Source: Macrostomum lignano
Lineage: Eukaryota
Direction of reading: 5' to 3'
Length of the DNA: 64,000 bases
Assembly (NCBI GenBank): GCA_002269645.1
Contig: NIVC01000934.1
Coordinates: 62,001 to 126,000 of the forward strand
Made by a program: the position numbers and the translations under genes. The notes under the pieces were generated by a model, which did not search any database, was not told where the DNA came from, and saw nothing but the letters and a program-made list of their open reading frames with translations. This document shows, piece by piece, positions 19,301-60,511 of the stretch. The number at the start of each line of letters is the position of its first letter. Position 1 is the stretch's first letter.

Positions 19301-19330
19301 GTCATGCAAACAATCATAGAAGCCTCATAT
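16325..19330 (+). repeat. 22-23-bp satellite (AAACAATCATAGAAGCGTCATGT)n, ~130 copies, inside H3
   Basis: Direct periodicity; copy number estimated from length. Confidence 0.96.
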
Positions 19331-21540: not shown

Positions 21541-21587
21541 AAAGTTTTTTATTAAAAGCTTTTATTCAAGGACAAATAAAGGACAAA

Positions 21588-23027: not shown

Positions 23028-23077
23028 TTAGGGTTAGGTTAGGGTTAGGGTTAGGGTTAGGCTAGGGTTAGGGTTAG
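23028..23077 (+). repeat. Interstitial (TTAGGG)n tract inside H4
   Basis: Same position in the element as the H3 tract. Confidence 0.88.
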
Positions 23078-25708: not shown

Positions 25709-25787
25709 TTAGGGTTAGGTTAGGGTTAGGGTTAGGGTTAGGGCTAGGGTTAGGCTAGGGTTAGGGTTAGGTTTGGATTAGGGTTAG
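25709..25787 (+). repeat. Interstitial (TTAGGG)n tract inside H5
   Basis: Same position in the element as the H3 and H4 tracts. Confidence 0.88.
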
Positions 25788-26010
25788 AAGGTTGACAGAT
25801 ATTTTTAGATTTTCAAGGCTTATTGGGGGCATTGCTGAGATGTCAGGGGGGGGGAGTTGATATGTTAAAGCTTGTGGGGGGAATTACTGACATGTCAAGG
25901 CTTACAAGGTTTGACAGGAGATTTTTTAAGATTTCAAGGATACATGTAGCTTATTAAAAAAACGTGTATTGCATTTCTTTGGCTCCCCAACGGGGGGCGT
26001 AGATTGCTAG

Positions 26011-36760: not shown

Positions 36761-37254
36761 CTTTCCGCTCGTGTCTGTGCCTGCAGTTGCCATGGACAGA
36801 AGGGGATAAAAGAATAAATATATGAGGCGAGATAAAACCAAATGGAAAGTTTCAAACATAAAAATATATTTCAAATCGGTGCCAAACAGGTTGAATATAA
36901 AAATTTTCCTCATCTTCATCATTTGGAAATGAAATCGGGGAATTCGGCAGACCGGGGCAGCGGGAAAATCCAAGGCTCTGGAGAAGCAGCCGAGAGTTTT
37001 GCTGAGCTCTGCTCAGGCATTCTGGGATAAATTGGTTGCTTATGGAACTGGGATTTGCATGCAAACTTTATAGCTCAGTCGGGTGCACAAGAAGTACTGA
37101 AGATTGCATAAAGGTTTAATGAGGTTAGCGATCTGCATCTGAATATTAAATAAATAATTGTGTTAATTTAAGCCACTGTATGGGAGCCCAGCTCAGTGAG
37201 TGGCACACTTTGGATACACGGCAACATGAGGGCTTATCTTAGAGTACTTCTGTC

Positions 37255-37678
37255 CCTGACTCATGCCAATCTGTCACTGACTCATGCCAATCTGTCACTG
37301 ACTCATGCCAATCTGTCACTGACTCATGCCAATCTGTCACTCACTCATGCCAATCTGTCACTGACTCATGCCAATCTGTCACTGACTCATGCCAATCTGT
37401 CACTGACTCATGCCAATCTGTCACTGACTCATGCCAATCTGTCACTGACTCATGCCAATCTGTCACTGACTCATGCCAGTCTGTCACTGACTCATGCCAA
37501 TCTGTCACTGACTCATGCCAATCTGCCACTCACTCATGCAAATCTGTCACTGACTCATGCCAATCTGTCACTGACTCATGCCAATCTGTCACTGACTCAT
37601 GCCAATCTGTCACTGACTCATGCCAATCTGTCACTGACTCATGCCAATCTGTCACTGACTCATGCCAGTCTGTCACTG
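37255..37678 (-). repeat. 21-bp minisatellite (CAGTGACAGATTGGCATGAGT)n beginning at the kinase-1 stop codon, ~20 copies
   Basis: Direct periodicity; the unit includes CAG TGA. Confidence 0.95.
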
Positions 37679-38134
37679 CAGAAATTCGTGCTCCAGCAGC
37701 TCCGCGGTGGCCGCTCGCCTCCTCGGCTCCCTCTTGACGCACCGTCCGTAGAAGTCCCTCAGCAGGGCGGAGGTCCCGGCCGGCAGCTGCGGCATGTCGT
37801 GTCTTTGAATCCTCAGCGGGATCCGATACCACTCGAGCTGCCAGTTCGGAGGCTGCATCTCCAGCATCTCGAACACGGAGCAGCCGAAAGCCCACACGTC
37901 AGACTTGGGTGAGTACACGATTCTTCCGTCCTCATTGTACAGCTCAGGAGCCTTGAAGTAGGTGGTTCCGCACTCCGTCTTGGTGCTGCGCATCGTGGCG
38001 AAGACCTCCTTGGCGAGACCGAAGTCGATCAGCTTGATGAGGCCCTCATTGGTGAGCATTATGTTGGAGCACTTGATGTCACGGTGCAGGGTGACGGGAC
38101 TGCGGCTGTGCAGGAAGTTAAGCGCTGTGCAGAT
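37673..38134 (-). CDS. Ankyrin-repeat Ser/Thr kinase paralogue 1, exon 3 (kinase C-lobe)
   Basis: HRDIKCSN, DFG, GTTYFKAPE and DVWAFGC motifs; CTCACAG acceptor; TGA at 37673-37675. Confidence 0.92.
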   Translation of the reverse strand: MCTALNFLHSRSPVTLHRDIKCSNIMLTNEGLIKLIDFGLAKEVFATMRSTKTECGTTYFKAPELYNEDGRIVYSPKSDVWAFGCSVFEMLEMQPPNWQLEWYRIPLRIQRHDMPQLPAGTSALLRDFYGRCVKREPRRRAATAELLEHEFLQ

Positions 38135-38159
38135 CTGTGAGTTGGGGAGCGATTGAGCA

Positions 38160-38745
38160 GGGGTGGTGTGGGATCTGAGCTGCTTGGAGAAGTCCCTCAC
38201 TGCTGCATGGGGTGGTGTGGGATCTGAGCTGCTTGGAGAAGTCCCTCACTGCTGCATGGGGTGGTGTGGGATCTGAGCTGCTTGGAGAAGTCCCTCACTG
38301 CTGCATGGGGTGGTGTGGGATCTGAGCTGCTTGGAGAAGTCCCTCACTGCTGCATGGGTGGTGTGGGATCTCACCTGCTTGGAGAAGTCCCTCACTGCTG
38401 CATGGGGTGGTGTGGGATCTGAGCTGCTTGGAGAAGTCCCTCACTGCTGCATGGGGTGGTGTGGGATCTCACCTGCTTGGAGAAGTCCCTCACTGCTGCA
38501 TGGGGTGGTGTGGGATCTCAGCTGCTTGGAGAAGTCCCTCACTGCTGCATGGGCTGGTGTGGGATCTGAGCTGCTTGGAGAAGTCCCTCACTGCTGCATG
38601 GGGTGGTGTGGGATCTGAGCTGCTTGGAGAAGTCCCTCACTGCTGCATGGGGTGGTGTGGGATCTGAGTTTTTTGGAGAAGTCCCTCACTGCTGCATGGG
38701 GTGGTGTGGGATCTCACCTGCTTGGAGAAGTCCCTCACTGCTGCC
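38160..38745 (-). repeat. 49-bp minisatellite made of the last 27 nt of kinase exon 2 plus the first 22 nt of the intron, ~12 copies
   Basis: Unit GCAGCAGTGAGGGACTTCTCCAAGCAG-(g/c)t(g/c)agatcccacaccaccccat. Confidence 0.95.
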
Positions 38746-39140
38746 TCATCGAAGGGCCGTCGCTGCAGCTGCATCAGCTCAGAGAGGCTGTGGCCGGAGA
38801 TCAGCTCGGTGAAGATGCACAGCTTGCCCTTCTTGATGCGCTCAGACTTGAGGAACTGCACAATGTTCGGGTGCCGGATGGCCTTCAGGACGGAGATCTC
38901 CGCGTTCTCCTTCTCGATGGCCTCGTCCACAAGCCTGGCGCTGCTGGCACCTTCCAGCCTGACGATCTTGACAGCCACAGTCTGGCGCTTATCGGTGAAC
39001 GCCTTGTACACCTTGCCGAAGCCGCCTACTCCGAGCAGCTGCTTGTTGCCGTCACCATCGAGAAGGAAGTGCCAGCTGGAGAAGGCGGGGTCCAGAGACG
39101 GCCTCGCACTGAAAGAGGAGAGGGTTGGGAGACTGAAGCA
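38718..39140 (-). CDS. Ankyrin-repeat Ser/Thr kinase paralogue 1, exon 2 (kinase N-lobe)
   Basis: LGVGGFGKVY, VAVK and EISVLKAIRHPNIVQF; CAG|GTGAGA donor. The acceptor is at 39140 or, alternatively, 39108. Confidence 0.88.
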
Positions 39141-39223
39141 CTGCGGGATGGCTGCAGAAATGGGGAACTGAGCAGGCAGGGAGAGTCTGTCAGCTGATCA
39201 TTGTGAGCCACTCTTAGCTGAAC

Positions 39224-40825
39224 CGAATGCAATTTCCCAAGTGAAAAGTGGAAGACGGCCTGCCTTGCTGACGGAGTCTCCTCGGACTGCAGCTGCAAGC
39301 CAGACATTGCCTGGCCCAGCCTCCGCTCTTCTCCATCAGGCTGCTGCCGCCGCTGCTCTGCGATCCACTCCCGAATCCGAGCTCCGTGCTGAGAGTTCCG
39401 CTCTGTGTAGTCGGCCACCGACTCGCCACCGGAATCGAGAAGGTCGAATGGGGCGAGGCCGAGAGAGTCCGCGATGAGGCGGAGCGAGTCCAGGTCGTGA
39501 TGCTGAGCAGCCAGGTGAGCAGGTGTGGCTCCGTTTGAGTCTTTTTCCAACAGACAGGCCGGACCGAGCTCTGAGATGAGCCACTTGAGACAGGAGTTAG
39601 TCTTCTCATTCATAGCGGCCCAGTGAATGGCAGTGCGTTGTAAGTAGCCAGGCTGATGGAAGCAGTCGGATCCGAGGACTGATTTGAAGAACTGCATGGA
39701 ATCGGCGCCCTGCTTCCAAGCAGCGAGATGGACGGGAGTGTCTCCTTCTTGGTCTCGAACGGAGAGACAGTCGGTTCCGCACTCGTTTACCAGCCACTTG
39801 AGACAGGAGTTAGTCTTCTCATTGATAGCGGCTTGGTGAATGGCAGTGCGTTGTAAGTAGCCAGGCTGATGGAAGCAGTCGGATCCGAGGACTGATTTGA
39901 AAAACTGCATGGAATCGGCGCCCTGCTTCCAAGCAGCGAGATGGACGGGAGTGTCTCCATCTTGGTCTCGAACGGAGAGACAGTCGGTTCCGCACTCGTT
40001 CACCAGCCACTTGAGACAGGAGTTAGTCCCATTCAAAGCGGCCCAGTGAATGGCAGTTTGTTGTAATAAGCCAGGCTGATGGAAGCAGTCGGATCCGAGG
40101 ACTGATTTGAAGAACTGCATGGAATCGGCGCCCTGCTTCCAAGCAGCGAGATGGACGGGAGTGTTTTCTTGTTGGTCTCGAACGGAGAGACAGTCGGTTC
40201 CGCACTCGTTTACCAGCCACTTGAGACAGGAGTTAGTCGCTTCATTCTCAGCGGCACAGTGAATGGCAGTGCGTTGTAAGTAGCCAGGCTGATGGAAGCA
40301 GTCGGATCCGAGGACTGATTTGAAAAACTGCATGGAATCGGCGCCCTGCTTCCAAGCAGCGAGATGGACGGGAGTGTCTCCATCTTGGTCTCGAACGGAG
40401 AGACAGTCGGTTCCGCACTCGTTCACCAGCCACTTGAGACAGGAGTTAGTAGCTTCATTCACAGCGGCAAAGTGAATGGCAGTGCGTTGGAATCGGCCAG
40501 GCTGATGGAAGCAGTCGGATCCGAGGCTGCGGTGAATGAGCTCCATCCATGACACATCTCGACACAAGGCAGCCAGGTGCACAGGAGTGTTGCCTCTTTC
40601 GTTGGTGCAGGTGAGGCAGTCGGGTCCGAGTTTCTTAATAAGAGCCTCGAAGCAGCGGAGACCGTCGGATAGATAGGTCACGTGATGAGCAATGGACTGA
40701 TTCAACTGGTTGATGTTGACTGCGAAGTTGGCGTCGAGCTGCCGGCAGAGGGGGAGCAGGCGGCCTGCGTCCTTGGCACGGAGGGCTGCAGCGACTTCTT
40801 CGCGCACTGAGGCTTGCCGGGCCAT
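39224..40825 (-). CDS. Ankyrin-repeat Ser/Thr kinase paralogue 1, exon 1 (~12 ankyrin repeats, including 5 double units); spliced product ~830 aa
   Basis: Long ORF from ATG 40825 with repeated GxTPVHLAA and TAIHxAA motifs. The donor is uncertain (GT at 39223 or GC at 39263). A 2-nt indel between paralogues in this interval supports an intron here. Confidence 0.88.
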
Positions 40826-40874
40826 GTCTGCAGAGTGGCGCGGACTGCGAGCGCGCTGGGCTGCTCTGTGCCGC

Positions 40875-40881
40875 TTTTATA
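40875..40881 (-). promoter_or_regulatory. TATA box (CATATAAAAG) ~50 nt upstream of the kinase-1 ATG
   Basis: Consensus match, conserved at the same distance in paralogue 2. Confidence 0.6.
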
Positions 40882-41102
40882 TGGGCGTTGCGGAGAGGCG
40901 GGCTGAGCGGCATCCGAGCCAGACTACTGTGAGTAGGCAAAGCAGAGTAAACTGCAGATGCTGTGCTGAGTCTGTCAGTTCTCAGCTCGGAACTCAGCGA
41001 GACCGACTGCTGGCCGCAGGACACGGGAAGGTGAGCGACAGCTGCTGGGACCGGCGCCGTGGATTCTGGCATTGGAAATGGTGAATTATTAATTGTGAGT
41101 GC

Positions 41103-44303: not shown

Positions 44304-46276
44304 TGTCATGACTTATGGGGTGGGGCCGCGTGGTAGGGGTGGAGCTTGTTTAGTAAGCCTAGCTAGCAGTACGTACGGTAATGTACATGCGCGGGCCACC
44401 GTGCCCCTTGGCCTATAAAATATACAGAGCGTGGAGGGTTTTGCCTCAACTGAGTTTACTCCAGAATAAGCGAATTGACTTCATTACAATTGGCGACGAG
44501 AATGGCTTCAGTTGGACAACTAGAGCCTTACGAGGAAGGCAAAGATTGGGACGCCTATCAAGAGCGAATGGACTCTTACATGCTTGCAAACGGCATAGAA
44601 GGCGACGACAAGAAGAAGGCAGTGTTTCTGACATTGATTGGCGAACGATGCTACGCAGTCCTGCGGGATCTCTGCAGTCCGACCAAGCCAACAGATCTGC
44701 AATACAGCGCCCTCACCGAGCACCTTCAAAAGTACTTCAAACCGAAGAAGCCAGTAATCGCTGAACGGTTCAAGTTCTACAAGCGAGCACAAAAGGACGG
44801 AGAGACGGCTGCTCAATTTCTGGCTGCGCTGCGGAATCTGGCCGATTCGTGCGAGTTCGGCGGGTTTCGAGAAGAAGCTCTCCGAGACTGTTTCGTTTGT
44901 GGTCTTCGGGACCAGCGGACCCAGCAGCGACTCCTGATGGAGGAGAAGCTCACGCTGGATGTGGCCAAGAAAATTGCCCTCCCGGCGGAGATCGCTAAGT
45001 CGGAAACTGAGCAGTGGAAATCGAGCTCAGAGGTCAGCTCAGTCCAGCAGGTAGCGCCAGACTCGAAGGCGTGCTACAGGTGCGGATTGAAAGGCCACCT
45101 GTCGGCAGCCTGCCACTTCAGGACCGCAAAGTGCCACAACTGCGGGAAAGTTGGACACCTGCAGAAAGTTTGCCGCTCAGCCAAGAAAGCCTCCAGCACA
45201 ACGAAAGCCGGACGGCCAGAGAACGGACCAGCGCACGCAATGCAAACGGAAGAGGAGGAGGAAGCAGCAACTGGCTGGATTTCGCAAGTCACTGCATCGG
45301 CCAAGAAGATCAGCGTAAGCCTGCTGGTGAATGACCAGCCCCTCACCATGCAGCTGGACACCGGTGCCTGCGTCAGCCTCGTACCGGAGTCGGTGTGGAA
45401 GCAGCTCGGACGACCTCCGCTGACACCAACACGCCTGCGACTCCGGACCTGGACGGGCGAGCCAATACAAGTCAAGGGAACAGCCGAGGTCAGGGTCAAC
45501 TACGACGGAAGACAGCATGATAAGCTGCCGCTGGTGGTCACCAGTCAGACCGGAGCCTGCCCATTGCTAGGACGCAATTGGCTGGAAAAGGTGCGACTCA
45601 ACTGGACTCAGTTGTTTGCCAACCAGATCAGCCAGGCGCCGGTGCAGAACAGCGGGCCTCTCGACCAGATGCTGGAGGAGTTCGCTGATGTTTTCGACGA
45701 GAGCCTGGGGCAGTTGAAGGATCAGACAGTCGCACTGAGACTTAAAAGTGACGCACAGCCTCGATTCTGCAAGGCCAGACCCGTGCCATTCGCAGTGCGG
45801 GACAAGCTTGAGCTCGAGCTCCAAGACATGCTCAACAAAGGCATCATCCGCCCGGTGACCTACAGCGAGTGGGCTACGCCAGTGGTTCCGGTACTCAAGG
45901 CGGACGGCTCAGTCCGACTGTGCGGCGACTATAAACTGACGTTGAACCCTCAGCTCCACATCGACCAGTACCGCTGCCTACGCCTGAAGAGCTTTACGAG
46001 CAGATGGGACGGGGTCAGCTGTTCTCAAAACTCGATCTGTCACAATGTTATCTTCAGTTTCCACTCGACGAAGAGAGCTGCAAGCTGACGACCATCAACA
46101 CGCATAAAGGGCTTTTCGAGTACCTCCGGTTGCCATTTGGCGTCAGTTCGGCTCCTGCGATTTGCCAGAGGCTGATGGAAACACTTTTGAAGGGCGTGCC
46201 GGGAGTCTGTTGCCGCATTGATGACATCCTGGTGTCCGGTCCGTCAATGAGTGAGCACCTAGCAGCGCTTCTCCCA
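44304..46276 (+). mobile_element. 3'-truncated Ty3/Gypsy (Mag-like) LTR retrotransposon A: 5' LTR 44304-44488, PBS 44491-44500, gag-pro-RT from 44502
   Basis: TGT...ACA LTR and TGGCGACGAG PBS. Gag with two CCHC knuckles, protease LDTGA and RT through RIDD, with a frameshift near 45975. No RNase H, integrase or 3' LTR. Confidence 0.92.
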
Positions 46277-46428
46277 GACTGAGAAGACTCAGGTGTCACC
46301 TGATGGCACTGATAGAGCTCAGTGGGAAATATGAGATGTTGAGGCAATAGGGTAATCCCCTAATCCTCGTAACAGGTGAGTCAGGCCACCTGTTGATGTG
46401 CATGCCGTGAGCCTATGAACATGCTGAC
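46277..46428. repeat. 152-bp dispersed, hairpin-rich element; second copy at 61068-61219
   Basis: Two ~90% identical copies in the same orientation with matching ends. Confidence 0.85.
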
Positions 46429-48649
46429 GTTGCAAGTGACTTTCTGCCACAGGCGGCACTGGTCTCTTGGAATCGAAAATTGCTAGAAGCGGTTTGTGGC
46501 CAGTGACCAGGATGAAATTTCGACCCAACAGGTACTTATGGAACTTCTTAAGTCCAAATATAATTAAGAGTACCAATGCTTCATTTTCAATTTGGGCATA
46601 GTTATTTTCAGCAGCTGACAGTGTTCTAGAAGCGTAGGCGATTGGCCTGTCTCCGGTCTTTGTTTCATGGGAAATGACCGCACCAAGACCGTAAGGTGAA
46701 GCGTCATATTCTAGCTTCAGCTTCTTGGACAGATCATAGTGAGTCAGCACCTTGCTTGAAGTAAGTTGATCTTTGACGTGCTTGAACGCGGATTCGCACT
46801 CGGCTGGCCAGTCGAAATCCTTTTCTTTTCGAAGTCGCAAGTAAAAGGGGTGCATCCGAGTTGCCAGATTCTGGATGAATTTTCCATAGTAATTTTTCAG
46901 TCCAATCGAAGCCCTCAGCTCTGACACATTTCGTGGGCATGGAGCCTCATGGATAGCTCTGATCTTGTCCTCAGTTGGGTGAATTCTCTCTTCATCCATC
47001 CTGTATCCAAGGAAAGTGACAGACCTCTGCATGAATTTACACTTCGACTTCTTTAGTCTGACACCTCGCTCTCGAAAGCGTTGCAAAACCTTCTTCAGAT
47101 TTTGCAAGTGTTCCTCGGAATTCTTGCCAACTACTAAAACATCGTCAATGAAGCAGATGACTCCGCTCAGTCCTTGCAACATCTTGGCCAACTACTAAAA
47201 CATCGTCAATGAAGCAGATGACTCCGCTCAGTCCTTGCAACATCTTGGCCAACTACTAAAACATCGTCAATGAAGCAGATGACTCCGCTCAGTCCTTGCA
47301 ACATCTTGGCCAACTACTAAAACATCGTCAATGAAGCAGATGACTCCGCTCAGTCCTTGCAACATCTTGTCCATGGCCATCTGGAAAACTACCGGTCCAC
47401 TGGCTAGTCCGTATTGCAGCCGCTGGCACTGAAACAATCCCTTGTGCGTATTGAGCACAATGTACTGTTTGGAGTCTTCGTCCAATTATAGCTGCAGAAA
47501 TGGTTGAGTAGCGTCCAACTTAGTGACATACTTGCCTCCATTTAGAGCACTAAACAGATCTTCCTGCCTGGGCAATGGGTACTGGTCGACAATCAGAACC
47601 TTGTTCAGTGTCGTCTTGAAATCCGCAAATTCTCACTGATCAAAGCGAACAGGCTTTTTGGTTATCAAAATTTCTACGAAGTAAGCAGGGTTACCTCTGT
47701 CAAATACCCGATTAATGCTTGGTGGTGATACTCTGGCTTCTTGGCCACACGGTTCATTCGCGAAGTACTCCGTAACCTGCTTGTTGCGAAATCCTTTCAG
47801 AGCCACGGTAGACTTACATGCAACTCCCAGGTGTCCTTCTTTTCCACACTTGTTGCACTTTTTATTACGATGTGGGCAAGCATTTGCCAAGTGATCTGGG
47901 CCAGAGCAACGGTAGCACCTGCGAGTAAATGTAGGCTTCTCCTTGTTTCCTTCCCTGATTTGGCGGGTCTCAGTAGCGCGTCGAAAAGCTGGCTTCCGCT
48001 TCTGGAGCTGGTCGCTTCGAGTGCCAACTCTGTTCACTGCTGGAGCAGATCCTTGGATGCTGCGAGCGTTCTTGAATGCATTCTCAATGACCTGGGCCTC
48101 CTAAACTGCGACCTTGAATGTCGAGTCGTCTTTTAGAGTGGTCAGCAGTTTGTTCAACATATGCTCGTCTCTGAGGCCGAAGTCAAAAGCATCGCGGAGC
48201 GCTTGATCCAGGAATGCGTCAAACTTGCAGCTGGCACTGAGGCTTCGAAGACTTACAACGAAGTCGGCTATGGTCTCGCCATCCTTCTGCTTCCTTTGAG
48301 CGAATACGAATCGTTGAGCAATAGAGCTCAATTCCGGTGTAAACTGGTGCCGGAGTGCAGTCAGTAGCTCCTCGCTGGCGCAATTGCGTTCCTCAGAATT
48401 GAGTAGGCCTCTTCTCCGATCAGGGTCAGCAGGTTCGCCTTTTCTCAGCTTCATCAGTGACTTTCTTGGCCACATGAAAATACTCCAGCCGCTCCTCGTA
48501 CTCCTCCCAGTTCCGAAGGCTGCTGCAGTTGAATGGTTCGATAACCGGCCTCGTCGCCATTGTTGTGTTTGTATCGTATTTCCTAAAAGCCGTTTATTAT
48601 AAAAGCAAGCACGCAGGCTCGAAGCCTAAGGAACGCAGCTTTCACAACA
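46429..48649 (-). mobile_element. 3'-truncated, degenerate Ty3/Gypsy (Mag-like) element B: 89-bp 5' LTR 48561-48649, PBS 48549-48559, gag, partial RT and RNase H
   Basis: LTR TGTTGTG...CACAACA and PBS TGGCGACGAGG. Two CCHC knuckles, RT FIDD and RNase H DASPYGLGAV / PIAYASRTL. Protease deleted; frameshifts present; no integrase. Confidence 0.92.
47126..47369 (-). repeat. 4 x 61-bp tandem duplication spanning the RT FIDD motif of element B
   Basis: Four consecutive identical 61-bp units. Confidence 0.95.
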
Positions 48650-49410: not shown

Positions 49411-49959
49411 TCAGGGAATAGTAAACTTTCGCACACACCATCAGTGATTCAAATTCGCTCATTGCTACTTGTCAGTAGTTGATCTCTCACATCTGGCCAT
49501 CACAAGCAGTCCCTCAGGTGCATAAAAAGTAACTCAGCGTGTCAGCTGTGAAAGCTCCAATTAAAACGCCTTTCTGTCGATAAGAGCTGCAAGAATGCCT
49601 GCAGGGCATGCAGAGCCAGCAGCTGAGCCACAGGGGGCTCACAGATAAGGCCGCCTGTTCACCGCAGCTGAGCCTACAGGAGGCATTCTAGCGGTGAAAT
49701 GCTTGGCGTACTGTTCTGCTCTGACAAAATCAGCAGTGCATTTTATCTAATCATTATTTTGGTGCCATGGCTCAGTGACTTGGCACAGATTTTTCATTTT
49801 AGCACTTTTATATCAGCTCACTGGGAATTTGAATTGCCTCGAAATATGCTTAACGAGAGAATATGTTTGTCTTTGAGGGAGATGATTTCCACTGTTGACA
49901 GTTCTCAGAGAGACAGCGGAACAACAGCAATGAAATCACAGCTTCTGATTGACCATCTT

Positions 49960-50238
49960 TCACTGACTCATGCCAGTCTGTCACTGACTCATGCCAGTCT
50001 GTCACTGACTCATGCCAGTCTGTCACTGACTCATGCCAATCTGTCACTGACTCATGCCAGTCTGTCACTGACTCATGCCAATCTGTCACTGACTAATGCC
50101 AATCTGTCACTGACTCATGCCAGTCTGTCACTGACTCATGCCAATCTGTCACTGACTCATGCCAATCTGTCACTGACTCATGCCAATCTGTCACTGACTC
50201 ATGCCAATCTGTCACTGACTCATGCCAGTCTGTCACTG
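49960..50238 (-). repeat. 21-bp minisatellite beginning at the kinase-2 stop codon, ~13 copies
   Basis: Same unit as 37255-37678. Confidence 0.95.
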
Positions 50239-50694
50239 CAGAAATTTGTGCTCCAGCAGCTCCGCGGTGGCCGCTCGCCTCCTCGGCTCCCTCTGGATGC
50301 ACCGTCCGTAGAAGTCCCTCATCAGGGCGGAGGTCCCGGCCGGTAGCTGCGGCATGTCGTGGTTTCGAATCCTCAGCGGGATCTGCTGCCACCTGAGCTG
50401 CCAGTTCGGAGGCTTCATCTCCAGCATCTCGAACACGGAGCAGCCGAAAGCCCACACGTCAGTCTTGGGTGAGTACACGATTCTTCCGTCCTCACTGAAC
50501 AGCTCAGGAGCCATGAAGTAGGTGGTTCCGCACTCCGTCTTGGTGCTCCGCATCGAGGCGAAGACCTCCTTGGCGAGACCGAAGTCGATCAGCTTGATGA
50601 GGCCCTCGTTGGTGAGCATCAAGTTGGAGCACTTGATGTCACGGTGCAGGGTGACGGGACTGCGGCTGTGCAGGAAGTTGAGCGCTGAGCAGAT
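50233..50694 (-). CDS. Ankyrin-repeat Ser/Thr kinase paralogue 2, exon 3 (kinase C-lobe)
   Basis: HRDIKCSN, DFG, GTTYFMAPE and DVWAFGC motifs; stop at 50233-50235. Confidence 0.92.
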   Translation of the reverse strand: MCSALNFLHSRSPVTLHRDIKCSNLMLTNEGLIKLIDFGLAKEVFASMRSTKTECGTTYFMAPELFSEDGRIVYSPKTDVWAFGCSVFEMLEMKPPNWQLRWQQIPLRIRNHDMPQLPAGTSALMRDFYGRCIQREPRRRAATAELLEHKFLQ

Positions 50695-50719
50695 CTGTGA
50701 GTTGGGGAGCGAGTGAGCA

Positions 50720-51746
50720 GGGGTGGTGTGGGATCTGAGCTGCTTGGAGAAGTCCCTCACTGCTGCATGGGGTGGTGTGGGATCTGAGCTGCTTGGAGAA
50801 GTCCCTCACTGCTGCATGGGGTGGTGTGGGATCTGAGCTGCTTGGAGAAGTCCCTCACTGCTGCATGGGGTGGTGTGGGATCTGAGCTGCTTGGAGAAGT
50901 CCCTCACTGCTGCATGGGCTGGTGTGGGATCTGAGCTGCTTGGAGAAGTCCCTCACTGCTGCATGGGCTGGTGTGGGATCTGAGCTGCTTGGAGAAGTCC
51001 CTCACTGCTGCATGGGGTGGTGTGGGATCTGAGCTGCTTGGAGAAGTCCCTCACTGCTGCATGGGCTGGTGTGGGATCTGAGCTGCTTGGAGAAGTCCCT
51101 CACTGCTGCATGGGGTGGTGTGGGATCTGAGCTGCTTGGAGAAGTCCCTCACTGCTGCATGGGCTGGTGTGGGATCTCACTTGCTTGGAGAAGTCCCTCA
51201 CTGCTGCATGGGGTGGTGTGGGATCTCACTTGCTTGGAGAAGTCCCTCACTGCTGCATGGGGTGGTGTGGGATCTCACCTGCTTGGAGAAGTCCCTCACT
51301 GCTGCATGGGGTGGTGTGGGATCTGAGCTGCTTGGAGAAGTTTCTCACTGCTGCATGGGGTGGTGTGGGATCTGAGCTGCTTGGAGAAGTCCCTCACTGC
51401 TGCATGGGGTGGTGTGGGATCTGAGCTGCTTGGAGAAGTCCCTCACTGCTGCATGGGGTGGTGTGGGATCTGAGCTGCTTGGAGAAGTTTCTCACTGCTG
51501 CATGGGCTGGTGTGGGATCTGAGCTGCTTGGAGAAGTCCCTCACTGCTGCATGGGGTGGTGTGGGATCTGAGCTGCTTGGGAAGTCCCTCACTGCTGCAT
51601 GGGCTGGTGTGGGATCTGAGCTGCTTGGAGAAGTCCCTCACTGCTGCATGGGCTGGTGTGGGATCTGAGCTGCTTGGAGAAGTCCCTCACTGCTGCATGG
51701 GGTGGTGTGGGATCTCACTTGCTTGGAGAAGTCCCTCACTGCTGCC
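50720..51746 (-). repeat. 49-bp exon-end/donor minisatellite, ~21 copies
   Basis: Same unit as 38160-38745. Confidence 0.95.
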
Positions 51747-52141
51747 TCGTCGAAGGGCCGTCGCTGCAGCTGCATCAGCTCAGAGAGGCTGTGGCCGGAG
51801 ATCAGCTCGGTGAAGATGCACAGCTTGCCCTTCTTGATGCGCTCAGACTTGAGGAACTGCACGATGTTCGGGTGCCGGATGGCCTTCAGGACGGAGATCT
51901 CCGCATTCTCCTTCTCGATGGCCTCGTCCATCAGCCTGGCGCTGCTGGCACCTTCCAGCCTGACGATCTTGACAGCCACAGTCTGGCGCTTATCGGTGAA
52001 CGCCTTGTACACCTGGCCGAAGCCGCCCGCTCCGAGCAGCTGCTTGTTGCCGTCACCATCGAGAAGGAAGTCCCAGCTGGAGAAGGCGGGGTCCAGAGCC
52101 GGCCTCGCACTGAAAGAGGAGAGGGTTGGGAGACTGAAGCA
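51719..52141 (-). CDS. Ankyrin-repeat Ser/Thr kinase paralogue 2, exon 2 (kinase N-lobe)
   Basis: LGAGGFGQVY, VAVK and HPNIVQF; CAA|GTGAGA donor. The acceptor is at 52141 or 52109. Confidence 0.88.
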
Positions 52142-52226
52142 CTGCGGGATTGCTGCAGAAATGGGGAACTGAGCAGGCAGGGAGAGAGTCTGTCAGGTGA
52201 TCATTGTGAGCCACTCTTAGCTGAAC

Positions 52227-54479
52227 CGAATGCAATTTCCCAAGTGAAAAGTGGAAGACGGCCTGCCTTGCTGACGGAGTTTCCTCGGACTGCGCGTCCA
52301 CCGCCCGCCGCAGCTGCAAGCCCGACATCGCCTGGCCCAGCCTCCGCTCTTCTCCATCAGGCTGCTGCCGCCGCTGCTCTGCGATCCACTCCCGAATCCG
52401 AGCTCCGTGCTGAGAGTTCCGCTCTGCGTAGTCGGCCACCGACTCGCCACCGGAATCGAGAAAGTCGAATGGGGCGAGGCCGAGAGAGTCCGCGATGAGG
52501 CGGAGCGAGTCCAGGTCGTGATGCTGAGCAGCCAGGTGAGCAGGTGTGGCTCCGTTTGAGTCTTTTTCCAACAGACAGGCCGGACCGAGCTCAGAGATGA
52601 GCCACTTGAGACAGGAGTTGGTCTCATTCATAGCAGCAAAGTGAATGGCAGTGCGTTGGACTAGGCCAGGCTGATGGAAGCAGTCGGATCCGAGGACTGA
52701 TTTGAAGAACTGCATGGAATCGGCGCCCTGCTTCCAAGCAGCGAGATGGACGGGAGTGTTTCCTTGTTGGTCTCGAACGGAGAGACAGTCGGTTCCGCAC
52801 TCGTTCACCAGCCACTTGAGACAGGAGTTAGTAGCTTCATTCGTAGCGGCATGGTGAATGGCAGTGCGTTGGCAATTGCCAGGCTGATGGAAGCAGTCGG
52901 ATCCGAGGACTGATTTGAAGAACTGCATGGAATCGGCGCCCTGCCTCCAAGCAGCGAGATGGACGGGAGTGTTTCCTTGTTGGTCTCGAACGGAGAGACA
53001 GTCGGTTCCGCACTCGTTCACCAGCCACTTGAGACAGGAGTTAGTCCCATTCAAAGCGGCCCAGTGAATGGCAGTGCGTTGTAAGTAGCCAGGCTGATGG
53101 AAGCAGTCGGATCCGAGGACTGATTTGAAGAACTGCATGGAATCGGCGCCCTGCTTCCAAGCAGCGAGATGGACGGGAGTGTTTCCTTGTTGGTCTCGAA
53201 CGGAGAGACAGTCGGTTCCGCACTCGTTCACCAGCCACTTGAGACAGGAGTTAGTAGCTTCATTCACAGCGGCACGGTGAATGGCAGTGCGTTGTAATAA
53301 GCCAGGCTGATGGAAGCAGTCGGATCCGAGGACTGATTTGAAGAACTGCATGGAATCGGCGCCCTGCCTCCAAGCAGCGAGATGGACGGGAGTGTTTCCT
53401 TGTTGGTCTCGAACGGAGAGACAGTCGGTTCCGCACTCGTTCACCAGCCACTTGAGACAGGAGTTAGTAGCTTCATTTAAAGCGGCTTTGTGAATGGCAG
53501 TTTGTTGTAATAAGCCAGGCTGATGGAAGCATTCGGATCCGAGGACTGATTTGAAGAACTGCATGGAATCGGCGCCCTGCTTCCAAGCAGCGAGATGGAC
53601 GGGAGTGTATCCATGTTGGTCTCGAACGGAGAGACAGTCGGTTCCGCACTCGTTCACCAGCCACTTGAGACAGGAGTTAGTCCCATTCAAAGCGGCCCAG
53701 TGAATGGCAGTTTGTTGTAATAAGCCAGGCTGATGGAAGCAGTCGGATCCGAGGACTGATTTGAAGAACTGCATGGAATCGGCGCCCTGCTTCCAAGCAG
53801 CGAGATGGACGGGAGTGTTTCCTTGTTGGTCTCGAACGGAGAGACAGTCGGTTCCGCACTCGTTCACCAGCCACTTGAGACAGGAGTTGGTCGCTTCATT
53901 CTCAGCGGCACAGTGAATGGCAGTGCGTTGGACTAGGCCAGGCTGATGGAAGCATTCGGATCCGAGGACTGATTTGAAGAACTGCATGGAATCGGCGCAC
54001 TGCTTCCAAGCAGCGAGATGGACGGGAGTGTCTCCTTGTTGGTCTCGAACGGAGAGACAGTCGGTTCCGCACTCGTTCACCAGCCACTTGAGACAGGAGT
54101 TAGTAGCTTCATTCACAGCGGCAAAGTGAATGGCAGTGCGTTGGAGTCGGCCAGGCTGACGGAAGCAGTCGGATCCGAGGCTGCGGTGAATGAGCTCCAT
54201 CCATGACTCATCTCGATACAAGGCAGCCAGGTGCACAGGAGTGTTGCCGTATTGGTTGGTGCAGGTGAGGCAGTCGGGTCCGAGTTTCTTAATAAGAGCC
54301 TCGAAGCAGCGGAGACCGTCGGATAGAAATGTCACGTGATGAGCAATGGACTGATTCAACTGGTTGATGATGACTTCGAAGTTGGCGTCGAGCTGCCGGC
54401 AGAGGGGGAGCAGGCGGCCTGCGTCCTTGGCACGGAGGGCTGCAGCGACTTCTTCGCGCACTGAGGCTTGCCGGGCCAT
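52227..54479 (-). CDS. Ankyrin-repeat Ser/Thr kinase paralogue 2, exon 1 (~18 ankyrin repeats, including 8 double units); spliced product ~1045 aa
   Basis: Long ORF from ATG 54479. Donor uncertain, as in paralogue 1. Confidence 0.88.
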
Positions 54480-54528
54480 GTCTGCAGAGTGGCGCGGACT
54501 GCGAGCGCGCTGGGCTGCTCTGTGCCGC

Positions 54529-54535
54529 TTTTATA
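54529..54535 (-). promoter_or_regulatory. TATA box upstream of the kinase-2 ATG
   Basis: CATATAAAAG in a position equivalent to paralogue 1. Confidence 0.6.
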
Positions 54536-54677
54536 TGGGCGGTGCGGAGAGGCGGGCTGAGCGGCATCCGAGCCAGACTACTGTGAGTAGGCAAAGCAGA
54601 GTAAACTGCAGATGCTGTGCTGAGTCTGTCAGTTCTGAGCTCGGAACTCAGCGAGACCGACTGCCGGCCGCAGGTGC

Positions 54678-55339
54678 GGCGACACGGGAAGGTGAGCGAC
54701 ACGGGAAGGTGAGCGACACGGGAAGGTGAGCGACACGGGAAGGTGAGCGACACGGGAAGGTGAGCGACACGGGAAGGTGAGCGACACGGGAAGGTGAGCG
54801 ACACGGGAAGGTGAGCGACACGGGAAGGTGAGCGACACGGGAAGGTGAGCGACACGGGAAGGTGAGCGACACGGGAAGGTGAGCGACACGGGAAGGTGAG
54901 CGACACGGGAAGGTGAGCGACACGGGAAGGTGAGCGACACGGGAAGGTGAGCGACACGGGAAGGTGAGCGACACGGGAAGGTGAGCGACACGGGAAGGTG
55001 AGCGACACGGGAAGGTGAGCGACACGGGAAGGTGAGCGACACGGGAAGGTGAGCGACACGGGAAGGTGAGCGACACGGGAAGGTGAGCGACACGGGAAGG
55101 TGAGCGACACGGGAAGGTGAGCGACACGGGAAGGTGAGCGACACGGGAAGGTGAGCGACACGGGAAGGTGAGCGACACGGGAAGGTGAGCGACACGGGAA
55201 GGTGAGCGACACGGGAAGGTGAGCGACACGGGAAGGTGAGCGACACGGGAAGGTGAGCGACACGGGAAGGTGAGCGACACGGGAAGGTGAGCGACACGGG
55301 AAGGTGAGCGACACGGGAAGGTGAGCGACACGGGAAGGT
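54678..55339 (+). repeat. 17-bp minisatellite (GCGACACGGGAAGGTGA)n, ~39 perfect copies
   Basis: Direct periodicity; the paralogous site at ~41020-41038 has a single unit. Confidence 0.97.
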
Positions 55340-55846
55340 GAGCGACACGGGAAGGTGAGCCCTTCATAAAGGGAAGGGCGAAACTAAGATTGGGGTACCG
55401 GAGAATGGGGACAAATTGAAGAACAAAATGAGCACAAGATATATATCCAGCGCTCCGAATACTGACTCGAACTCAATCCAGCACCTGAATACTCGAATGA
55501 GCAGGTCACGGGCAGCGGCTGATGAGCATCAGTGAGCTCACTGTTGCACAGGAACTCTTGATAGCGCCGTCATTGCAGAGCAGCATCAGTGAGCAAGTGA
55601 GCACAGCGCAACTCTCAGAGGAATATTTTACAATCGATTGCAGCTCATAAATCAGACAAGCTGAAGTCGACACTCAGAGCGCAGCCTTCTCAGCAACTGC
55701 TTGAGCACCTTTGTTTTGCATCAGCCAGCAGGTGGACAGCGGCTTGGTGTGGAGCCACCGACTTTGAGCACTCTGCTTGCTGAGTAATGTACATTAATGT
55801 ACTGATGTGCTTAGTGCTGTACTTTTGCAATAAACCGTTATGTTTT

Positions 55847-59582: not shown

Positions 59583-59693
59583 TCTCTCAGATCTCGCAGG
59601 CAATTCAATTCTACTCAGTTATGCTACTCTACTGCCTACTTCCAGTAGTGCAAGTACAGCCAGTCAGACAAACACCGAGCAGCAGCCGCTCAC

Positions 59694-60511
59694 CTGCTGG
59701 TCGGTGAGGTGAGCAAACGGCTGCTCCCTGCAGAAGGTGAGCATCTCCCAGAGCGTCACGGTGAAGCTCCAGACGTCGCTGTCGCAGGAGAAGCGGCCGT
59801 GCAGGACGGCCTCCCAGGCCATCCAGCGGATCGGCAGCGAGGCGCCGTGACCTCCGTCCAGCCTGCAGTAGTCAGCGGAGTAGAGAGGCTGAGACATGCC
59901 AAAGTCGCAGATCTTCACCTGGTAGTCTTCACCCAGCAGGCAGTTGCGGCAGGCCAGGTCTCGGTGCACCAGCTGCAGGGACTCCAGGTACTTCATGCCG
60001 CTGGCAATCTGAGCTGCCAGGTAGATGAGGCAGCCGTGAGACAGCGGCGGCTCAGGTGATGCAGCTGCAGCGGCTGCCCTGGAGCGCAGGAACTGGTGCA
60101 GGTCCCCATGCTGCATGAACTCCACCAGGATGCACTGCTGCGCCGCTGCGTCCTTGGTTGCCACGCCCAGCACCCTGACGATGTTCGGGTCCTGCAGGCG
60201 CGCCAACAGCCGCATCTCGCGCCGGAAGTCGCGGCGCGCCTGCGGCCCCGCGCCAGGCCGGAGAGTCTTGGCCGCCACCAGCAGCAGCCGGCCGCCAGGA
60301 GCGGCCCACTCGGCCAGGCGGACCTCGCCGAACTGGCCGGCACCAAGGCGCTCTTTCAGCGCCACGGAGCCCGGCGCCACCTCGAGAGCGGCGACCGCGT
60401 CGGAGTCGGCGCCGCCGTCCAGATCGTCAGGGACTCCAGCGACACCGCCGCAGTCCACGGCGGAGGCGAGGTCCGCGTCCGGACAGGCGTAGACTGTGTT
60501 GCCCGAGCAGC
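59694..60511 (-). CDS. DDR: DDR-like receptor tyrosine kinase, kinase exon
   Basis: LGAGQFGEV, VAAK, HRDLACRNCL, DFGMSQPLYSADY, LPIRWMAWE and SDVWSF, with DDR-type QGCSGNTVY upstream. Canonical splice sites. Confidence 0.93.

What the first reader, a model, noticed from the sequence alone, without database searches (positions are those of the whole stretch)
52610..54270. Ankyrin-kinase repeats are hypervariable only at binding-surface codons: candidate diversifying sensor-kinase family
SEEN: the ~210-213-bp double-ankyrin units of both paralogues (39590-40620 and 52610-54270) are nearly identical in DNA, with only scattered differences. A few codons, however, differ by 2-3 nt. Repeat A varies as RDQ[D/Q/E/H]G[D/N/Y]TPVHLAAW[K/R]. 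Repeat B varies as QPG[R/Y/L/N][F/L/V/C]Q[R/Q]TAIH[F/C/W/Q/K/R/H]AA[V/E/L/I/M/T]N[E/-][A/G/K/-]TN. The H-x-AA codon alone reads TTT, TGT, TGG, CAA, AAA, CGT or CAT between invariant flanks. KNOWN: in the ankyrin consensus D-x-x-G-x-T-P-L-H-x-A-A-x-x, the x positions (beta-turn and inner helix) form the ligand-binding groove, and most are those randomised in DARPin libraries. INFERENCE: homogenised scaffold plus diversified contact residues, fused to an intact MAP3K-like kinase and duplicated in tandem, is what a rapidly evolving intracellular recognition receptor (for example in innate immunity or allorecognition) would look like. I do not recognise this as a described family.
Basis: partly seen in the sequence, partly recalled or inferred. 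Interest (0 to 1): 0.85.

Follow-up and report, generated by a model that had tools for sequence, protein, structure and literature searches.

The report
Flatworm ankyrin-kinase genes with hypervariable repeats
Two neighbouring genes of the flatworm Macrostomum lignano encode kinases whose near-identical ankyrin repeats differ almost only at the residues lining the binding groove; this pattern was previously described for fast-diversifying recognition receptors of fungi, and the same repeat cassettes are shared with caspase genes elsewhere in the genome.

Summary
The window comes from Macrostomum lignano. It holds two intact tandem genes on the minus strand, g1 (804 aa) and g2 (1021 aa, identical to BOX15_Mlig023755g1). 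Each has an N-terminal ankyrin solenoid built from 4 or 7 near-identical 71-aa double-ankyrin units, followed by a catalytically intact STE-group kinase.

Over 28 units from five arrays, 30 of 44 variable nucleotides lie in 11 codons. Nine of those 11 codons, and all 8 sites picked by a site model, fall on published concave-surface positions (P about 1e-6). The scaffold is under purifying selection and is equally homogenised between kinase genes and ankyrin-caspase genes at other loci, although their caps have diverged (dS 0.27-1.26).

A second kinase subfamily with a different scaffold shows the same pattern. There, omega>1 survives a control for codon-specific rate. In the window's own subfamily it does not quite (omega 1.9, p=0.09).

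The closest known parallel is the "high internal conservation" repeats of fungal NOD-like receptors. These flatworm proteins have no NOD domain and join the repeats directly to a kinase or a caspase. The recognition-receptor reading is well supported as an evolutionary pattern. The ligand, the activation mechanism and any immune role are untested. I found no published description.

The parts
52267..54479 (-). g2 exon 1: start codon at 54479, N-terminal cap, ankyrin array, C-terminal cap and linker. Ends at a GC donor (AAG|GCAGGC).
   Evidence: ORF. The splice model reproduces P0001 (BOX15_Mlig023755g1) residue for residue. Pfam finds Ank_2 at 8e-65.
52617..54098 (-). g2 array of 7 full near-identical 71/70-aa double-ankyrin units (u1-u7). 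Hypervariable codons are unit positions 21, 23, 31, 32, 55, 56, 58, 63, 66, 68 and 69.
   Evidence: unit coordinates; statistics.
52110..52266 (-). g2 intron 1 (157 nt, GC-AG).
   Evidence: The annotated protein P0001 requires this junction. g1 and g2 differ here by a 2-nt indel.
51719..52109 (-). g2 exon 2: kinase N-lobe (GAGGFG, VAVK, alpha-C Glu) through ..AAVRDFSKQ.
   Evidence: Pfam finds Pkinase at 2e-54.
50695..51718 (-). g2 intron 2 (GT-AG), filled by a 49-bp minisatellite (about 21 copies). The minisatellite unit is the last 27 nt of exon 2 plus the first 22 nt of the intron.
50233..50694 (-). g2 exon 3: kinase C-lobe (HRDIKCSN, DFG, APE) and stop codon.
39264..40825 (-). g1 exon 1: start codon at 40825, caps, ankyrin array and linker. 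Same GC donor as g2.
39596..40444 (-). g1 array of 4 full double-ankyrin units (u1-u4).
38718..39108 (-). g1 exon 2 (kinase N-lobe).
37673..38134 (-). g1 exon 3 (kinase C-lobe and stop codon).
37395..41040 (.). Proximal copy of the tandem segmental duplication. Its partner is 49955-54701, about 95-96% identical. The flanks outside these limits are unrelated.
   Evidence: Self-BLAST of the window.
49955..54701 (.). Distal copy of the tandem segmental duplication. It is longer because of 3 extra ankyrin units and more minisatellite copies.

Best explanation
g1 and g2 are functional members of a Macrostomum-specific family of cytosolic proteins. In this family a long ankyrin solenoid, about 13 repeats in g1 and about 19 in g2, acts as a fast-diversifying binding module and is wired directly to an effector enzyme. 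In the window that enzyme is an active STE-group (STE20/MAP3K-like) kinase. At other loci it is a caspase or a different kinase.

Shown:
- The solenoid is built from near-identical 71-aa double-ankyrin cassettes. These are kept homogeneous within genes, between the tandem genes, and between unlinked kinase and caspase genes, by unit duplication and loss, unequal exchange and short-patch gene conversion.
- Almost all differences sit at residues lining the concave groove: the beta-turn/loop, position 8 of helix 1, and the end of helix 1.
- Those codons change roughly ten times faster than synonymous sites of the scaffold.
- The number and order of cassettes differ between recent duplicates.

Inferred:
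- Each array presents a different groove that binds an extended protein or peptide ligand.
- Ligand binding releases or clusters the C-terminal kinase, which then starts a stress-MAPK-type cascade. In the caspase paralogues it would start proteolysis and cell death.
- The ligands are non-self or conflict-related (microbial, viral or conspecific), so the family serves as a germline-encoded recognition repertoire.

My estimates are about 0.75 for 'diversifying groove-recognition module coupled to an effector' and about 0.4 for the specific immune or allorecognition role.
For: Organism and gene models: g2 is identical to M. lignano BOX15_Mlig023755g1. Both genes have open frames, conserved splice sites and all catalytic motifs. 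Domains are ankyrin plus Pkinase only. The kinase is nearest MST3/MST4/SLK/ASK1.

Fold: the AlphaFold2 model built with the family alignment has pLDDT 94.4. Its best structural neighbours are long ankyrin solenoids: NOMPC, the ankyrin-R/B membrane-binding domains that hold extended peptides in their groove, and TRPA1.

Clustering: 30 of 33 nt of the hypervariable codons vary, against 14 of 180 nt elsewhere. pN is 0.354 at hypervariable codons and 0.003 at the other 60, while scaffold pS is 0.032. On any tree, at least 38 nonsynonymous changes fall on 27 nonsynonymous sites, against 10 synonymous changes on 42 scaffold synonymous sites.

Site models: M2a against M1a gives LRT 124, omega 11.4, with sites 21, 31, 32, 55, 56, 63 and 66 above 0.9 and site 23 at 0.81. 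All 8 are concave-class positions (P=1.2e-6).

Independent replicate: subfamily II has a different scaffold and loci L003/L004. It gives M0 omega 2.25 and LRT 97, and it rejects the neutral hot-spot model (LRT 26.9, p=2e-7).

Concerted evolution across loci: scaffold differences between kinase-array and caspase-array units (1.2-2.7 of 180 nt) equal those within arrays (0.7-3.0). The caps of the same genes differ by dS 0.27 and 1.26.

Patch conversion since the g1/g2 duplication: hypervariable codons differ by 12.1% per nt against 1.7% elsewhere between matching units. Whole hexamers are swapped for ones present in other units of the same array.

Effector swapping: the same cassettes sit on caspases with intact QACRG, and subfamily-II arrays sit on a different kinase.

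Lineage-specific expansion is shown. The same evolutionary mode, with the same interpretation, is documented for fungal NLR ankyrin, TPR and WD repeats (PMC4986451).
Against: In the window's subfamily, the excess of nonsynonymous over synonymous change inside the hot codons is not significant once those codons get their own synonymous rate (omega 1.9, p=0.09). Naive Nei-Gojobori values inside those codons give pN about equal to pS.

Recombination among units violates the single-tree assumption of my site models, which are home-written, with M0 branch lengths on a fixed NJ topology rescaled by a single factor.

There is no oligomerisation (NOD) domain, death-fold domain or other known receptor-activation module, so the activation step is conjecture. 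There are no expression, polymorphism, ligand or phenotype data. Only one inbred line of one species was available.

The kinase C-lobe evolves at omega 1.3 between g1 and g2. That could mean relaxed constraint rather than adaptation.
Confidence: 0.6

Rival explanations
1. The molecular device is the same: a diversifying ankyrin groove coupled to a kinase or caspase. The arms race, however, is not with pathogens. The targets would be fast-evolving endogenous or conspecific proteins, for example in sexual conflict of this hermaphrodite (sperm or seminal proteins), germline or transposon control, or selfish toxin-antidote-like elements.
For: Nothing in the sequence points specifically to immunity. 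There is no TIR, death, CARD or NACHT domain. The genome is extremely rich in repeats and retroelements, including between the two genes. The effector kinase itself evolves fast between paralogues, as expected in intragenomic or sexual conflict.
Against: Where it has been studied (fungal HIC NLRs, PMC4986451), the pairing of a hypervariable repeat sensor with a cell-death protease or a stress-type kinase is associated with non-self recognition. There are no data on tissue expression either way.
Confidence: 0.2
2. No adaptive diversification. Rapid unit turnover and gene conversion homogenise the repeats. The 'hypervariable' codons are surface positions free of constraint, and they are either mutational or conversion hot spots or they retain old differences by chance.
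For: With a class-specific synonymous rate, the window's subfamily fits a hot class that is 7-12 times faster with omega not significantly above 1. Synonymous variants are enriched in the same codons.
Against: Unconstrained sites should diverge only as much as scaffold synonymous sites (pS 0.03), not ten times more. No known germline mechanism targets isolated codons that happen to be the ankyrin groove positions, and does so in two subfamilies with different DNA scaffolds. Scaffold codons lying between hot codons are quiet (pS 0.031). Subfamily II rejects the neutral hot-spot model.
Confidence: 0.12
3. Assembly or annotation artefact, or decaying pseudogenes.
For: Long near-identical repeats are hard to assemble. 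Public gene models of sister loci visibly collapse arrays. g1 against g2 shows dN>dS in the N-cap and the kinase C-lobe.
Against: Assembly errors would produce indels or random mismatches, not in-frame codon replacements at fixed positions. Both genes keep open frames of 804 and 1021 codons, splice signals and catalytic residues. The same pattern recurs in five arrays on three contigs and in a second subfamily. Scaffold omega is about 0.1-0.2.
Confidence: 0.03

Closest known systems
High-internal-conservation (HIC) ankyrin, TPR and WD repeats of fungal NOD-like receptors (Podospora HET-E/D/R and nwd genes; Dyrka et al. 2014, PMC4986451)
   Same: Repeats are at least 85% identical to each other. 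Hypervariable positions are confined to the binding surface; for ankyrin repeats these are the inner helix and the beta-hairpin/loop. Positive-selection signals are present. Repeats shuffle within and between loci by concerted evolution. Repeat numbers vary. The same repeat type is combined with different effector domains, a protein kinase among them.
   Different: There is no NACHT or NB-ARC domain at all. The repeats are N-terminal and the effector C-terminal. The unit is a 70/71-aa double ankyrin repeat. The host is an animal, where the paper found HIC repeats to be rare (0.8%). Effectors are an STE kinase or a caspase. RIP-type mutagenesis is not involved (kappa about 1.3-1.5).
Ankyrin-prodomain caspases of platyhelminths (PMC11463336)
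   Same: An ankyrin array serves as the N-terminal prodomain of a caspase in flatworms. The M. lignano ankyrin-caspases (P0002, P0011, P0012 and others) carry the very same cassettes as the window's kinases.
   Different: The window's genes end in a kinase, not a caspase. That paper reports ankyrin caspases as unique to parasitic flatworms and does not describe repeat homogenisation or hypervariability. No close orthologue of the M. lignano ankyrin-caspases turned up in parasitic species.
Animal ankyrin-plus-kinase proteins: ILK, TNNI3K (ankyrin N-terminal); ANKK1/RIPK4, DAPK1 (kinase N-terminal)
   Same: Ankyrin repeats and a protein-kinase fold in one cytosolic polypeptide. ILK and TNNI3K have the same domain order.
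   Different: By my knowledge those kinases are TKL or CAMK group, or pseudokinases. They are conserved low-copy orthologues with diverged, non-homogenised repeats. Here the kinase is STE group, the family is lineage-specific and multi-copy, and only ANKK1 appears, as a weak hit (E=1e-20).
DARPin combinatorial libraries
   Same: An invariant ankyrin scaffold with diversity placed at beta-turn and helix-1 positions. Eight of the 11 hypervariable codons coincide with DARPin positions 2, 3, 5, 13 and 14 (positions from my own knowledge of Binz et al. 2003; test, P=6e-6).
   Different: The flatworm arrays are natural and germline-encoded. Repeat B also varies at DARPin position 10 (Utges position 8) and in the inter-helix loop. 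DARPin position 33 is not varied.
Other modular near-identical repeat readers with hypervariable residues (TAL effectors, lamprey VLR cassettes)
   Same: Specificity is carried by a few residues per otherwise identical repeat. New specificities arise by reshuffling cassettes.
   Different: Different folds and ligands. VLRs are assembled somatically from incomplete germline genes, whereas here the germline genes are complete.

Membership tests
Ankyrin-repeat proteins (Pfam Ank clan) | Tandem 33-residue helix-turn-helix-loop repeats with the TPLH/AA signature, forming a solenoid | tested here: met
   Ank_2 at 8e-65, Ank at 2e-48. Residue-level alignments to NOMPC, TRPA1 and latrotoxin repeats. 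AlphaFold2 model with pLDDT 94 whose best structural matches are long ankyrin solenoids.
Active eukaryotic protein kinase, STE group | Complete catalytic motifs (GxGxxG, VAxK, alpha-C Glu, HRDxKxxN, DFG, APE) and closest similarity to STE20/STE11 kinases | tested here: met
   Pkinase at 2e-54. The motifs can be read in both genes. Best solved relatives are MST3/MST4/SLK/LOK (133-131 bits), ASK1 (124), PAK1 (123) and MAP3K2 (114). STE20 against MAP3K is not resolved.
NOD-like receptors / STAND NTPases | Central NACHT or NB-ARC nucleotide-binding oligomerisation domain | tested here: not met
   A Pfam scan of the full 1049-aa construct returns only ankyrin and kinase families above threshold. 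The 90-aa linker between them has no domain.
HIC repeat proteins in the sense of Dyrka et al. 2014 | Internal repeats at least 85% identical over at least 100 aa | tested here: met
   Mean unit identity is 0.91 in g1 and g2. Self-offset identity is 0.92 over 140 aa in P0001.
HIC repeat proteins in the sense of Dyrka et al. 2014 | Variable or positively selected sites map to the concave binding surface | tested here: met
   Nine of 11 hypervariable codons and 8 of 8 M2a sites are in the concave class of PMC8415598. Secondary-structure placement is confirmed on the pLDDT-94 model.
HIC repeat proteins in the sense of Dyrka et al. 2014 | omega>1 at those sites | tested here: inconclusive
   Window subfamily: LRT 124 and omega 11 under M2a, but omega 1.9 (p=0.09) when the hot class has its own synonymous rate. 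Sister subfamily: omega>1 survives that control (p=2e-7). Recombination is not modelled.
HIC repeat proteins in the sense of Dyrka et al. 2014 | Repeat exchange within and between loci, and repeat-number polymorphism between alleles | tested here: inconclusive
   Exchange between loci is shown. There are 4 against 7 units in 95%-identical tandem paralogues, with patch conversion. Allelic polymorphism could not be tested, because no population data were available.
ILK / TNNI3K-type ankyrin kinases | TKL-group kinase or pseudokinase domain; conserved single-copy orthologues across animals | tested here: not met
   No ILK or TNNI3K chain is among the 60 best solved relatives of the kinase domain. 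There is no orthologue outside Macrostomum.
Platyhelminth ankyrin-caspases | C-terminal caspase (Peptidase_C14) domain | tested here: not met
   The window's genes end in Pkinase. The caspase domain occurs in paralogous genes that carry the same cassettes.

The most novel reading that the evidence does not exclude
Flatworms possess a previously unrecognised class of germline-encoded intracellular recognition receptors. These are NOD-less fusions of a cassette-shuffled, groove-hypervariable ankyrin solenoid with a death or stress effector (caspase or STE kinase). Their cassettes circulate among unlinked genes. The system would be a convergent animal counterpart of fungal HIC-NLR allorecognition and immune receptors. 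It may read extended peptide ligands in a modular, repeat-by-repeat fashion.
Probability: 0.35. Interest if true: 0.85.

Novelty: new variant of a known kind. Interest (0 to 1): 0.72.

Why it matters
Platyhelminths are reported to have lost key extrinsic-apoptosis components such as FADD and DED caspases (PMC11463336), and little is known about how they recognise non-self.

A large, lineage-specific family in which one diversifying ankyrin cassette set is plugged into either a caspase or a MAPK-pathway-type kinase would be a concrete candidate for such a recognition system. M. lignano is an experimentally tractable model, with RNAi, transgenesis and an inbred line.

The finding would also show that the 'homogenise the scaffold, diversify the contact residues, shuffle the cassettes' strategy, so far documented mainly for fungal NLRs, arose independently in animals and does not need a NOD domain.

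On the practical side, the arrays amount to a natural DARPin-like library, and public gene models collapse them. The family is therefore under-counted in current annotations.

Tried and rejected
1. Nei-Gojobori pN/pS inside the hot codons alone gave about 1. I do not rely on it. Path-averaging over 2-3-nt codon differences manufactures 'synonymous' steps, and only 5.6 synonymous sites are involved.

2. The single-sequence AlphaFold2 model was poor (pLDDT 61) and was not used for mapping. The model built with the family alignment replaced it. The tool returns no coordinates, so surface mapping rests on the DSSP string plus a published per-position classification.

3. A diversity-generating-retroelement style or other base-specific mutagenesis is rejected. 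The variable codons use all four bases (for example TTT, TGT, TGG, CAA, AAA, CGT, CAT), kappa is about 1.3-1.5, and the host is a eukaryote.

4. Somatic assembly as in VLRs is rejected, because the germline genes are complete.

5. Exon shuffling is rejected, because each whole array lies in one exon.

6. Searches for orthologues outside Macrostomum found only kinase-level or caspase-level similarity.

7. Searches for the gene identifiers, for ankyrin or kinase expansions in Macrostomum, and for immune-challenge data found nothing usable.

8. My first guesses for intron 1 used GT donors and phase 0. They were wrong. The annotated and frame-consistent junction is GC-AG.
Full report
**What is there.** The window is eukaryotic, packed with minisatellites, and belongs to the free-living flatworm Macrostomum lignano. 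All strong protein hits are M. lignano models from assembly GCA_002269645.1, and P0001 (BOX15_Mlig023755g1) is identical to the distal gene.

Two genes lie head-to-tail on the minus strand inside a tandem duplication: 37395-41040 and 49955-54701, about 95-96% identical, with unrelated flanks. Each has three exons.
- g1: 40825-39264, 39108-38718, 38134-37673 (804 aa).
- g2: 54479-52267, 52109-51719, 50694-50233 (1021 aa).

Intron 1 is GC-AG and intron 2 is GT-AG. Exon 1 encodes an N-terminal cap, an array of 71/70-aa double-ankyrin units (4 full units in g1, 7 in g2), a C-terminal cap and a 90-aa linker. Exons 2 and 3 encode a protein kinase.

Pfam finds only ankyrin and Pkinase families. There is no NACHT or NB-ARC, death-fold or TIR domain, and no signal peptide is apparent. 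The kinase has every catalytic motif in both genes. It is closest to the STE-group kinases MST3/MST4/SLK (133 bits), ASK1 (124) and PAK1 (123). 'MAP3K-like' is therefore plausible but not resolved against STE20-like.

Among the window's 11 full units, 23 of 30 variable nucleotide sites fall in 11 codons (unit positions 21, 23, 31, 32, 55, 56, 58, 63, 66, 68, 69) and 7 fall in the remaining 180 nt (P=3e-17). Units are 91% identical in protein.

**More material from elsewhere in the genome.** The same cassette, with an essentially identical DNA scaffold, forms the prodomain of caspase genes on two other contigs (L001 and L002, tandem pairs again). Their caspase active sites are intact (..FLMAHG....QACRG..). 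This raised the sample to 28 full units from five arrays.
- Thirty of the 33 nt of the hypervariable codons vary, against 14 of 180 nt elsewhere (P=2e-22).
- Nei-Gojobori diversity is pN 0.354 at the 11 codons. At the other 60 codons it is pN 0.003 and pS 0.032. The scaffold is therefore under purifying selection (omega about 0.1) and was homogenised recently.
- The 11 codons carry about ten times more change than neutral scaffold sites.
- Tree-free lower bounds say the same. At least 38 nonsynonymous changes fall on 27 nonsynonymous sites, against 10 synonymous changes on 42 scaffold synonymous sites.

**Where the variable residues sit.** Alignments to solved ankyrin proteins fix the register. 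I used the numbering of Utges et al. 2021, in which the T of TPLH is position 4 and the concave surface comprises 1, 2, 3, 8, 11, 12, 32 and 33 (PMC8415598).
- Repeat A varies at positions 1, 3, 11 and 12.
- Repeat B varies at 33, 1, 3, 8 and 11, plus 13 and 14. That paper notes 13 and 14 as adjacent to the concave face and enriched in contacts.
- Nine of 11 hypervariable codons are concave-class (P=7e-6).
- Eight of 11 coincide with DARPin-randomised positions (P=6e-6; the DARPin positions are from my own knowledge).

With the family alignment AlphaFold2 gives a confident model (pLDDT 94.4, pTM 0.84). Its DSSP string puts positions 21 and 23 in the loop before helix 1 of repeat A, and 31 and 32 at the end of that helix. 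Positions 55-58 lie in the turn before helix 1 of repeat B, 63 in that helix, 66 just after it, and 68 and 69 in the inter-helix loop. The model's best structural neighbours are long solenoids: NOMPC, the ankyrin-R/B membrane-binding domains that hold extended peptides in their inner groove, and TRPA1. The tool returns no coordinates, so exposure could not be computed directly.

**Selection tests.** I wrote a Goldman-Yang-type codon likelihood: F3x4 frequencies, an NJ tree, and M0 branch lengths that were then rescaled.
- For the 27 distinct units, M1a gives lnL -996.06 and M2a gives -933.97. The LRT is 124 (p=1e-27), with omega2 = 11.4 on 11% of sites.
- Sites 21, 31, 32, 55, 56, 63 and 66 have posterior above 0.9, and site 23 has 0.81. 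All eight are concave-class (P=1.2e-6).

Two caveats apply. First, recombination among units violates the single-tree assumption. Second, synonymous variants are themselves enriched inside the hot codons: at least 7 on 5.6 synonymous sites, against 10 on 41.6. When the hot class gets its own synonymous rate, the fit prefers a class 6.8 times faster with omega 1.9, which is not significantly above 1 (LRT 2.9, p=0.09).

For the window's subfamily I can therefore say firmly that the groove codons evolve, or coalesce, about ten times faster or deeper than neutral scaffold sites. Relaxed constraint alone cannot do that. I cannot formally exclude a codon-level hot spot. Scaffold codons lying between the hot codons are as quiet as the rest (pS 0.031). 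That argues against simple hitch-hiking and is left unexplained.

**An independent replicate.** The homology search also revealed a second, larger kinase subfamily with N-cap 'MATEMERKLRAALEAGDSEE..'. Its 70-aa unit, 'LKWLVKELGSDCLTVPDxxGxTAVHLAAxHQGIESLEWIKRQIGTDCFRLKGxxDRTAFHFAAxKSDNSN', has a different scaffold. Genomic arrays at L003 (12 full units in one ORF) and L004 gave 16 units.
- Variation again concentrates at Utges positions 33, 1, 3 and 11 of repeat A, and 32/33, 1, 8 and 11 of repeat B.
- Hot codons have pN 0.54. The rest have pS 0.03.
- Here M0 omega is 2.25, M2a against M1a gives LRT 97 (omega 15), and the neutral hot-spot model is rejected (LRT 26.9, p=2e-7).

The recurrence of the pattern at the same structural positions on a different DNA scaffold is the strongest argument that selection on the groove, not a sequence-specific mutational quirk, is responsible.

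**How the diversity is handled.**
- Scaffold differences between units of kinase arrays and caspase arrays (means 1.2-2.7 of 180 nt) are no larger than within arrays (0.7-3.0).
- The caps of the same genes have diverged by dS 0.27 / dN 0.22 (N-cap) and dS 1.26 / dN 0.45 (C-cap). The internal cassettes are therefore exchanged between unlinked genes with different effectors.
- Hypervariable haplotypes recur in different genes. For example, NC..H..T.EA occurs in g2 and in L002, and 25 of 28 units are distinct A+B combinations. Twenty-one of 55 pairs of hot sites show all four gametes.
- Between positionally matching units of g1 and g2, hot codons differ by 12.1% per nt against 1.7% elsewhere. Whole codons or hexamers are replaced (AGA/TAC; TACTTA/CTAGTC) by versions present in other units of the same array. 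This implies short-patch conversion since the duplication.
- g1 and g2 also differ in unit number (4 against 7).
- Subfamily-II arrays are found on a different kinase paralogue too (P0026, P0016).
- Within the family there is a gradient from homogenised arrays (self-identity 0.85-0.94) to old, diverged ones (0.2-0.65).

**Interpretation.** The anatomy is that of a recognition module (a long ankyrin groove with a diversified lining) fused to an effector (an STE kinase here; a caspase or another kinase elsewhere). It sits in a lineage-specific multigene family of about 39 M. lignano models, some redundant between two annotations, with nothing comparable in other taxa among 5.8 billion proteins.

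The closest documented system is the HIC repeat domains of fungal NLRs. They show the same internal conservation, the same concave-surface hypervariability for ankyrin repeats, concerted evolution within and between loci, repeat-number variation and effector swapping (PMC4986451). That paper found HIC repeats rare in metazoans (0.8%).

The flatworm proteins fail the defining NLR test because they have no NOD domain. So they work like HIC-NLR sensor domains but are not NLRs. Ankyrin-prodomain caspases of flatworms are published (PMC11463336), but as a feature of parasitic species and without any mention of repeat homogenisation. I found no paper on the ankyrin-kinases or on these gene identifiers. 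ILK/TNNI3K-type ankyrin kinases are excluded by kinase group and by conservation pattern.

**What remains inference.** It is not shown that the groove binds ligands, that binding activates the kinase (by relief of autoinhibition or by clustering; no oligomerisation module is present), or that the ligands are non-self. A role in another fast conflict (sexual, transposon or selfish elements) fits the sequence equally well.

The kinase itself evolves quickly between g1 and g2: N-lobe omega 0.25, C-lobe omega 1.34, overall 0.73. This rejects omega=0.2 at p=9e-5. It is compatible with either adaptation or relaxation.

**Verdict.** It is a new variant of a known kind, of clear interest to people working on the evolution of innate recognition.

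Noticed in passing
window 50720-51745 and 38160-38744: Intron 2 of both genes is filled by a 49-bp minisatellite (about 21 and 12 copies). Its unit is the last 27 nt of exon 2 (..AAVRDFSKQ) plus the first 22 nt of the intron. Several internal copies keep a GT donor (4 of 18 in g2, 3 of 12 in g1), so cryptic splice donors are repeated every 49 nt.
   Followed up: partly
window 54679-55360 (g2) and about 41017-41040 (g1): There are 40 perfect copies of the 17-mer GCGACACGGGAAGGTGA immediately 5' of g2's start region, and a single copy at the matching place upstream of g1. The homology between the two gene copies ends here.
   Followed up: partly
window 37249-37678 and 49955-50238: A 21-bp minisatellite (20.5 and 13.5 copies) begins right at the stop codon of both genes, i.e. 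in the 3' UTR.
   Followed up: no
window 52110-52266 and 39109-39263: Intron 1 of both genes uses a GC donor (AAG|GCAGGC) with a normal polypyrimidine-CAG acceptor.
   Followed up: yes
window 37673-38134 vs 50233-50694: The kinase C-lobe differs at 20.5 nonsynonymous against 4.5 synonymous positions between the tandem paralogues (omega 1.34). The N-lobe is conserved (omega 0.25). The N-terminal cap also has dN 0.039 > dS 0.011.
   Followed up: partly
window 44475-47191: LTR-retrotransposon remnants lie between the two genes: a gag zinc-knuckle/aspartyl-protease ORF (44475-46088, +) and an RT/RNase H ORF (46319-47191, -), in opposite orientations.
   Followed up: partly
window 16322-26008: Kilobase arrays of a 23-bp satellite (AGAAGCGTCATGTAAAAAATCAT) sit in a block repeated three times. 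Each copy is followed by short interstitial TTAGGG runs (20281-20353, 23028-23077, 25709-25787). The region is AT-rich (GC 0.33-0.37), against 0.55-0.58 around the genes.
   Followed up: no
window 8003-9301 (-) and 59664-60458 (-): Two other coding pieces are present: a glycosyl-hydrolase-15-like ORF (Pfam 1e-48) and a tyrosine/TKL-type kinase exon (PK_Tyr_Ser-Thr 3e-64), unrelated to the ankyrin-kinases.
   Followed up: partly
L003 10627-13150: The genome encodes 12 full subfamily-II units in one open frame, but the public gene model for this locus (P0006) keeps only about five. Annotation and transcript assembly collapse these arrays, so family size and array lengths are under-estimated.
   Followed up: partly
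L001, L002; proteins P0002, P0003, P0011, P0012, P0043, P0126, P0128, P0129, P0141, P0160: M. lignano, a free-living flatworm, has many ankyrin-prodomain caspases, in tandem pairs. The published survey (PMC11463336) describes ankyrin caspases as unique to parasitic flatworms. Some M. lignano caspases instead carry a PF04970 domain (P0132, P0133, P0137).
   Followed up: partly
proteins P0026, P0016, P0039: Subfamily-II ankyrin arrays are joined to a different kinase paralogue (..VIHRDINCSNMIV.., Gly-loop GRGGFGEVH). This is a third effector on the same kind of sensor array.
   Followed up: no
protein P0009, residues about 290-480: In one diverged family member the linker between the ankyrin domain and the kinase is expanded into a long EQQEQKQ-type low-complexity repeat.
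   Followed up: no
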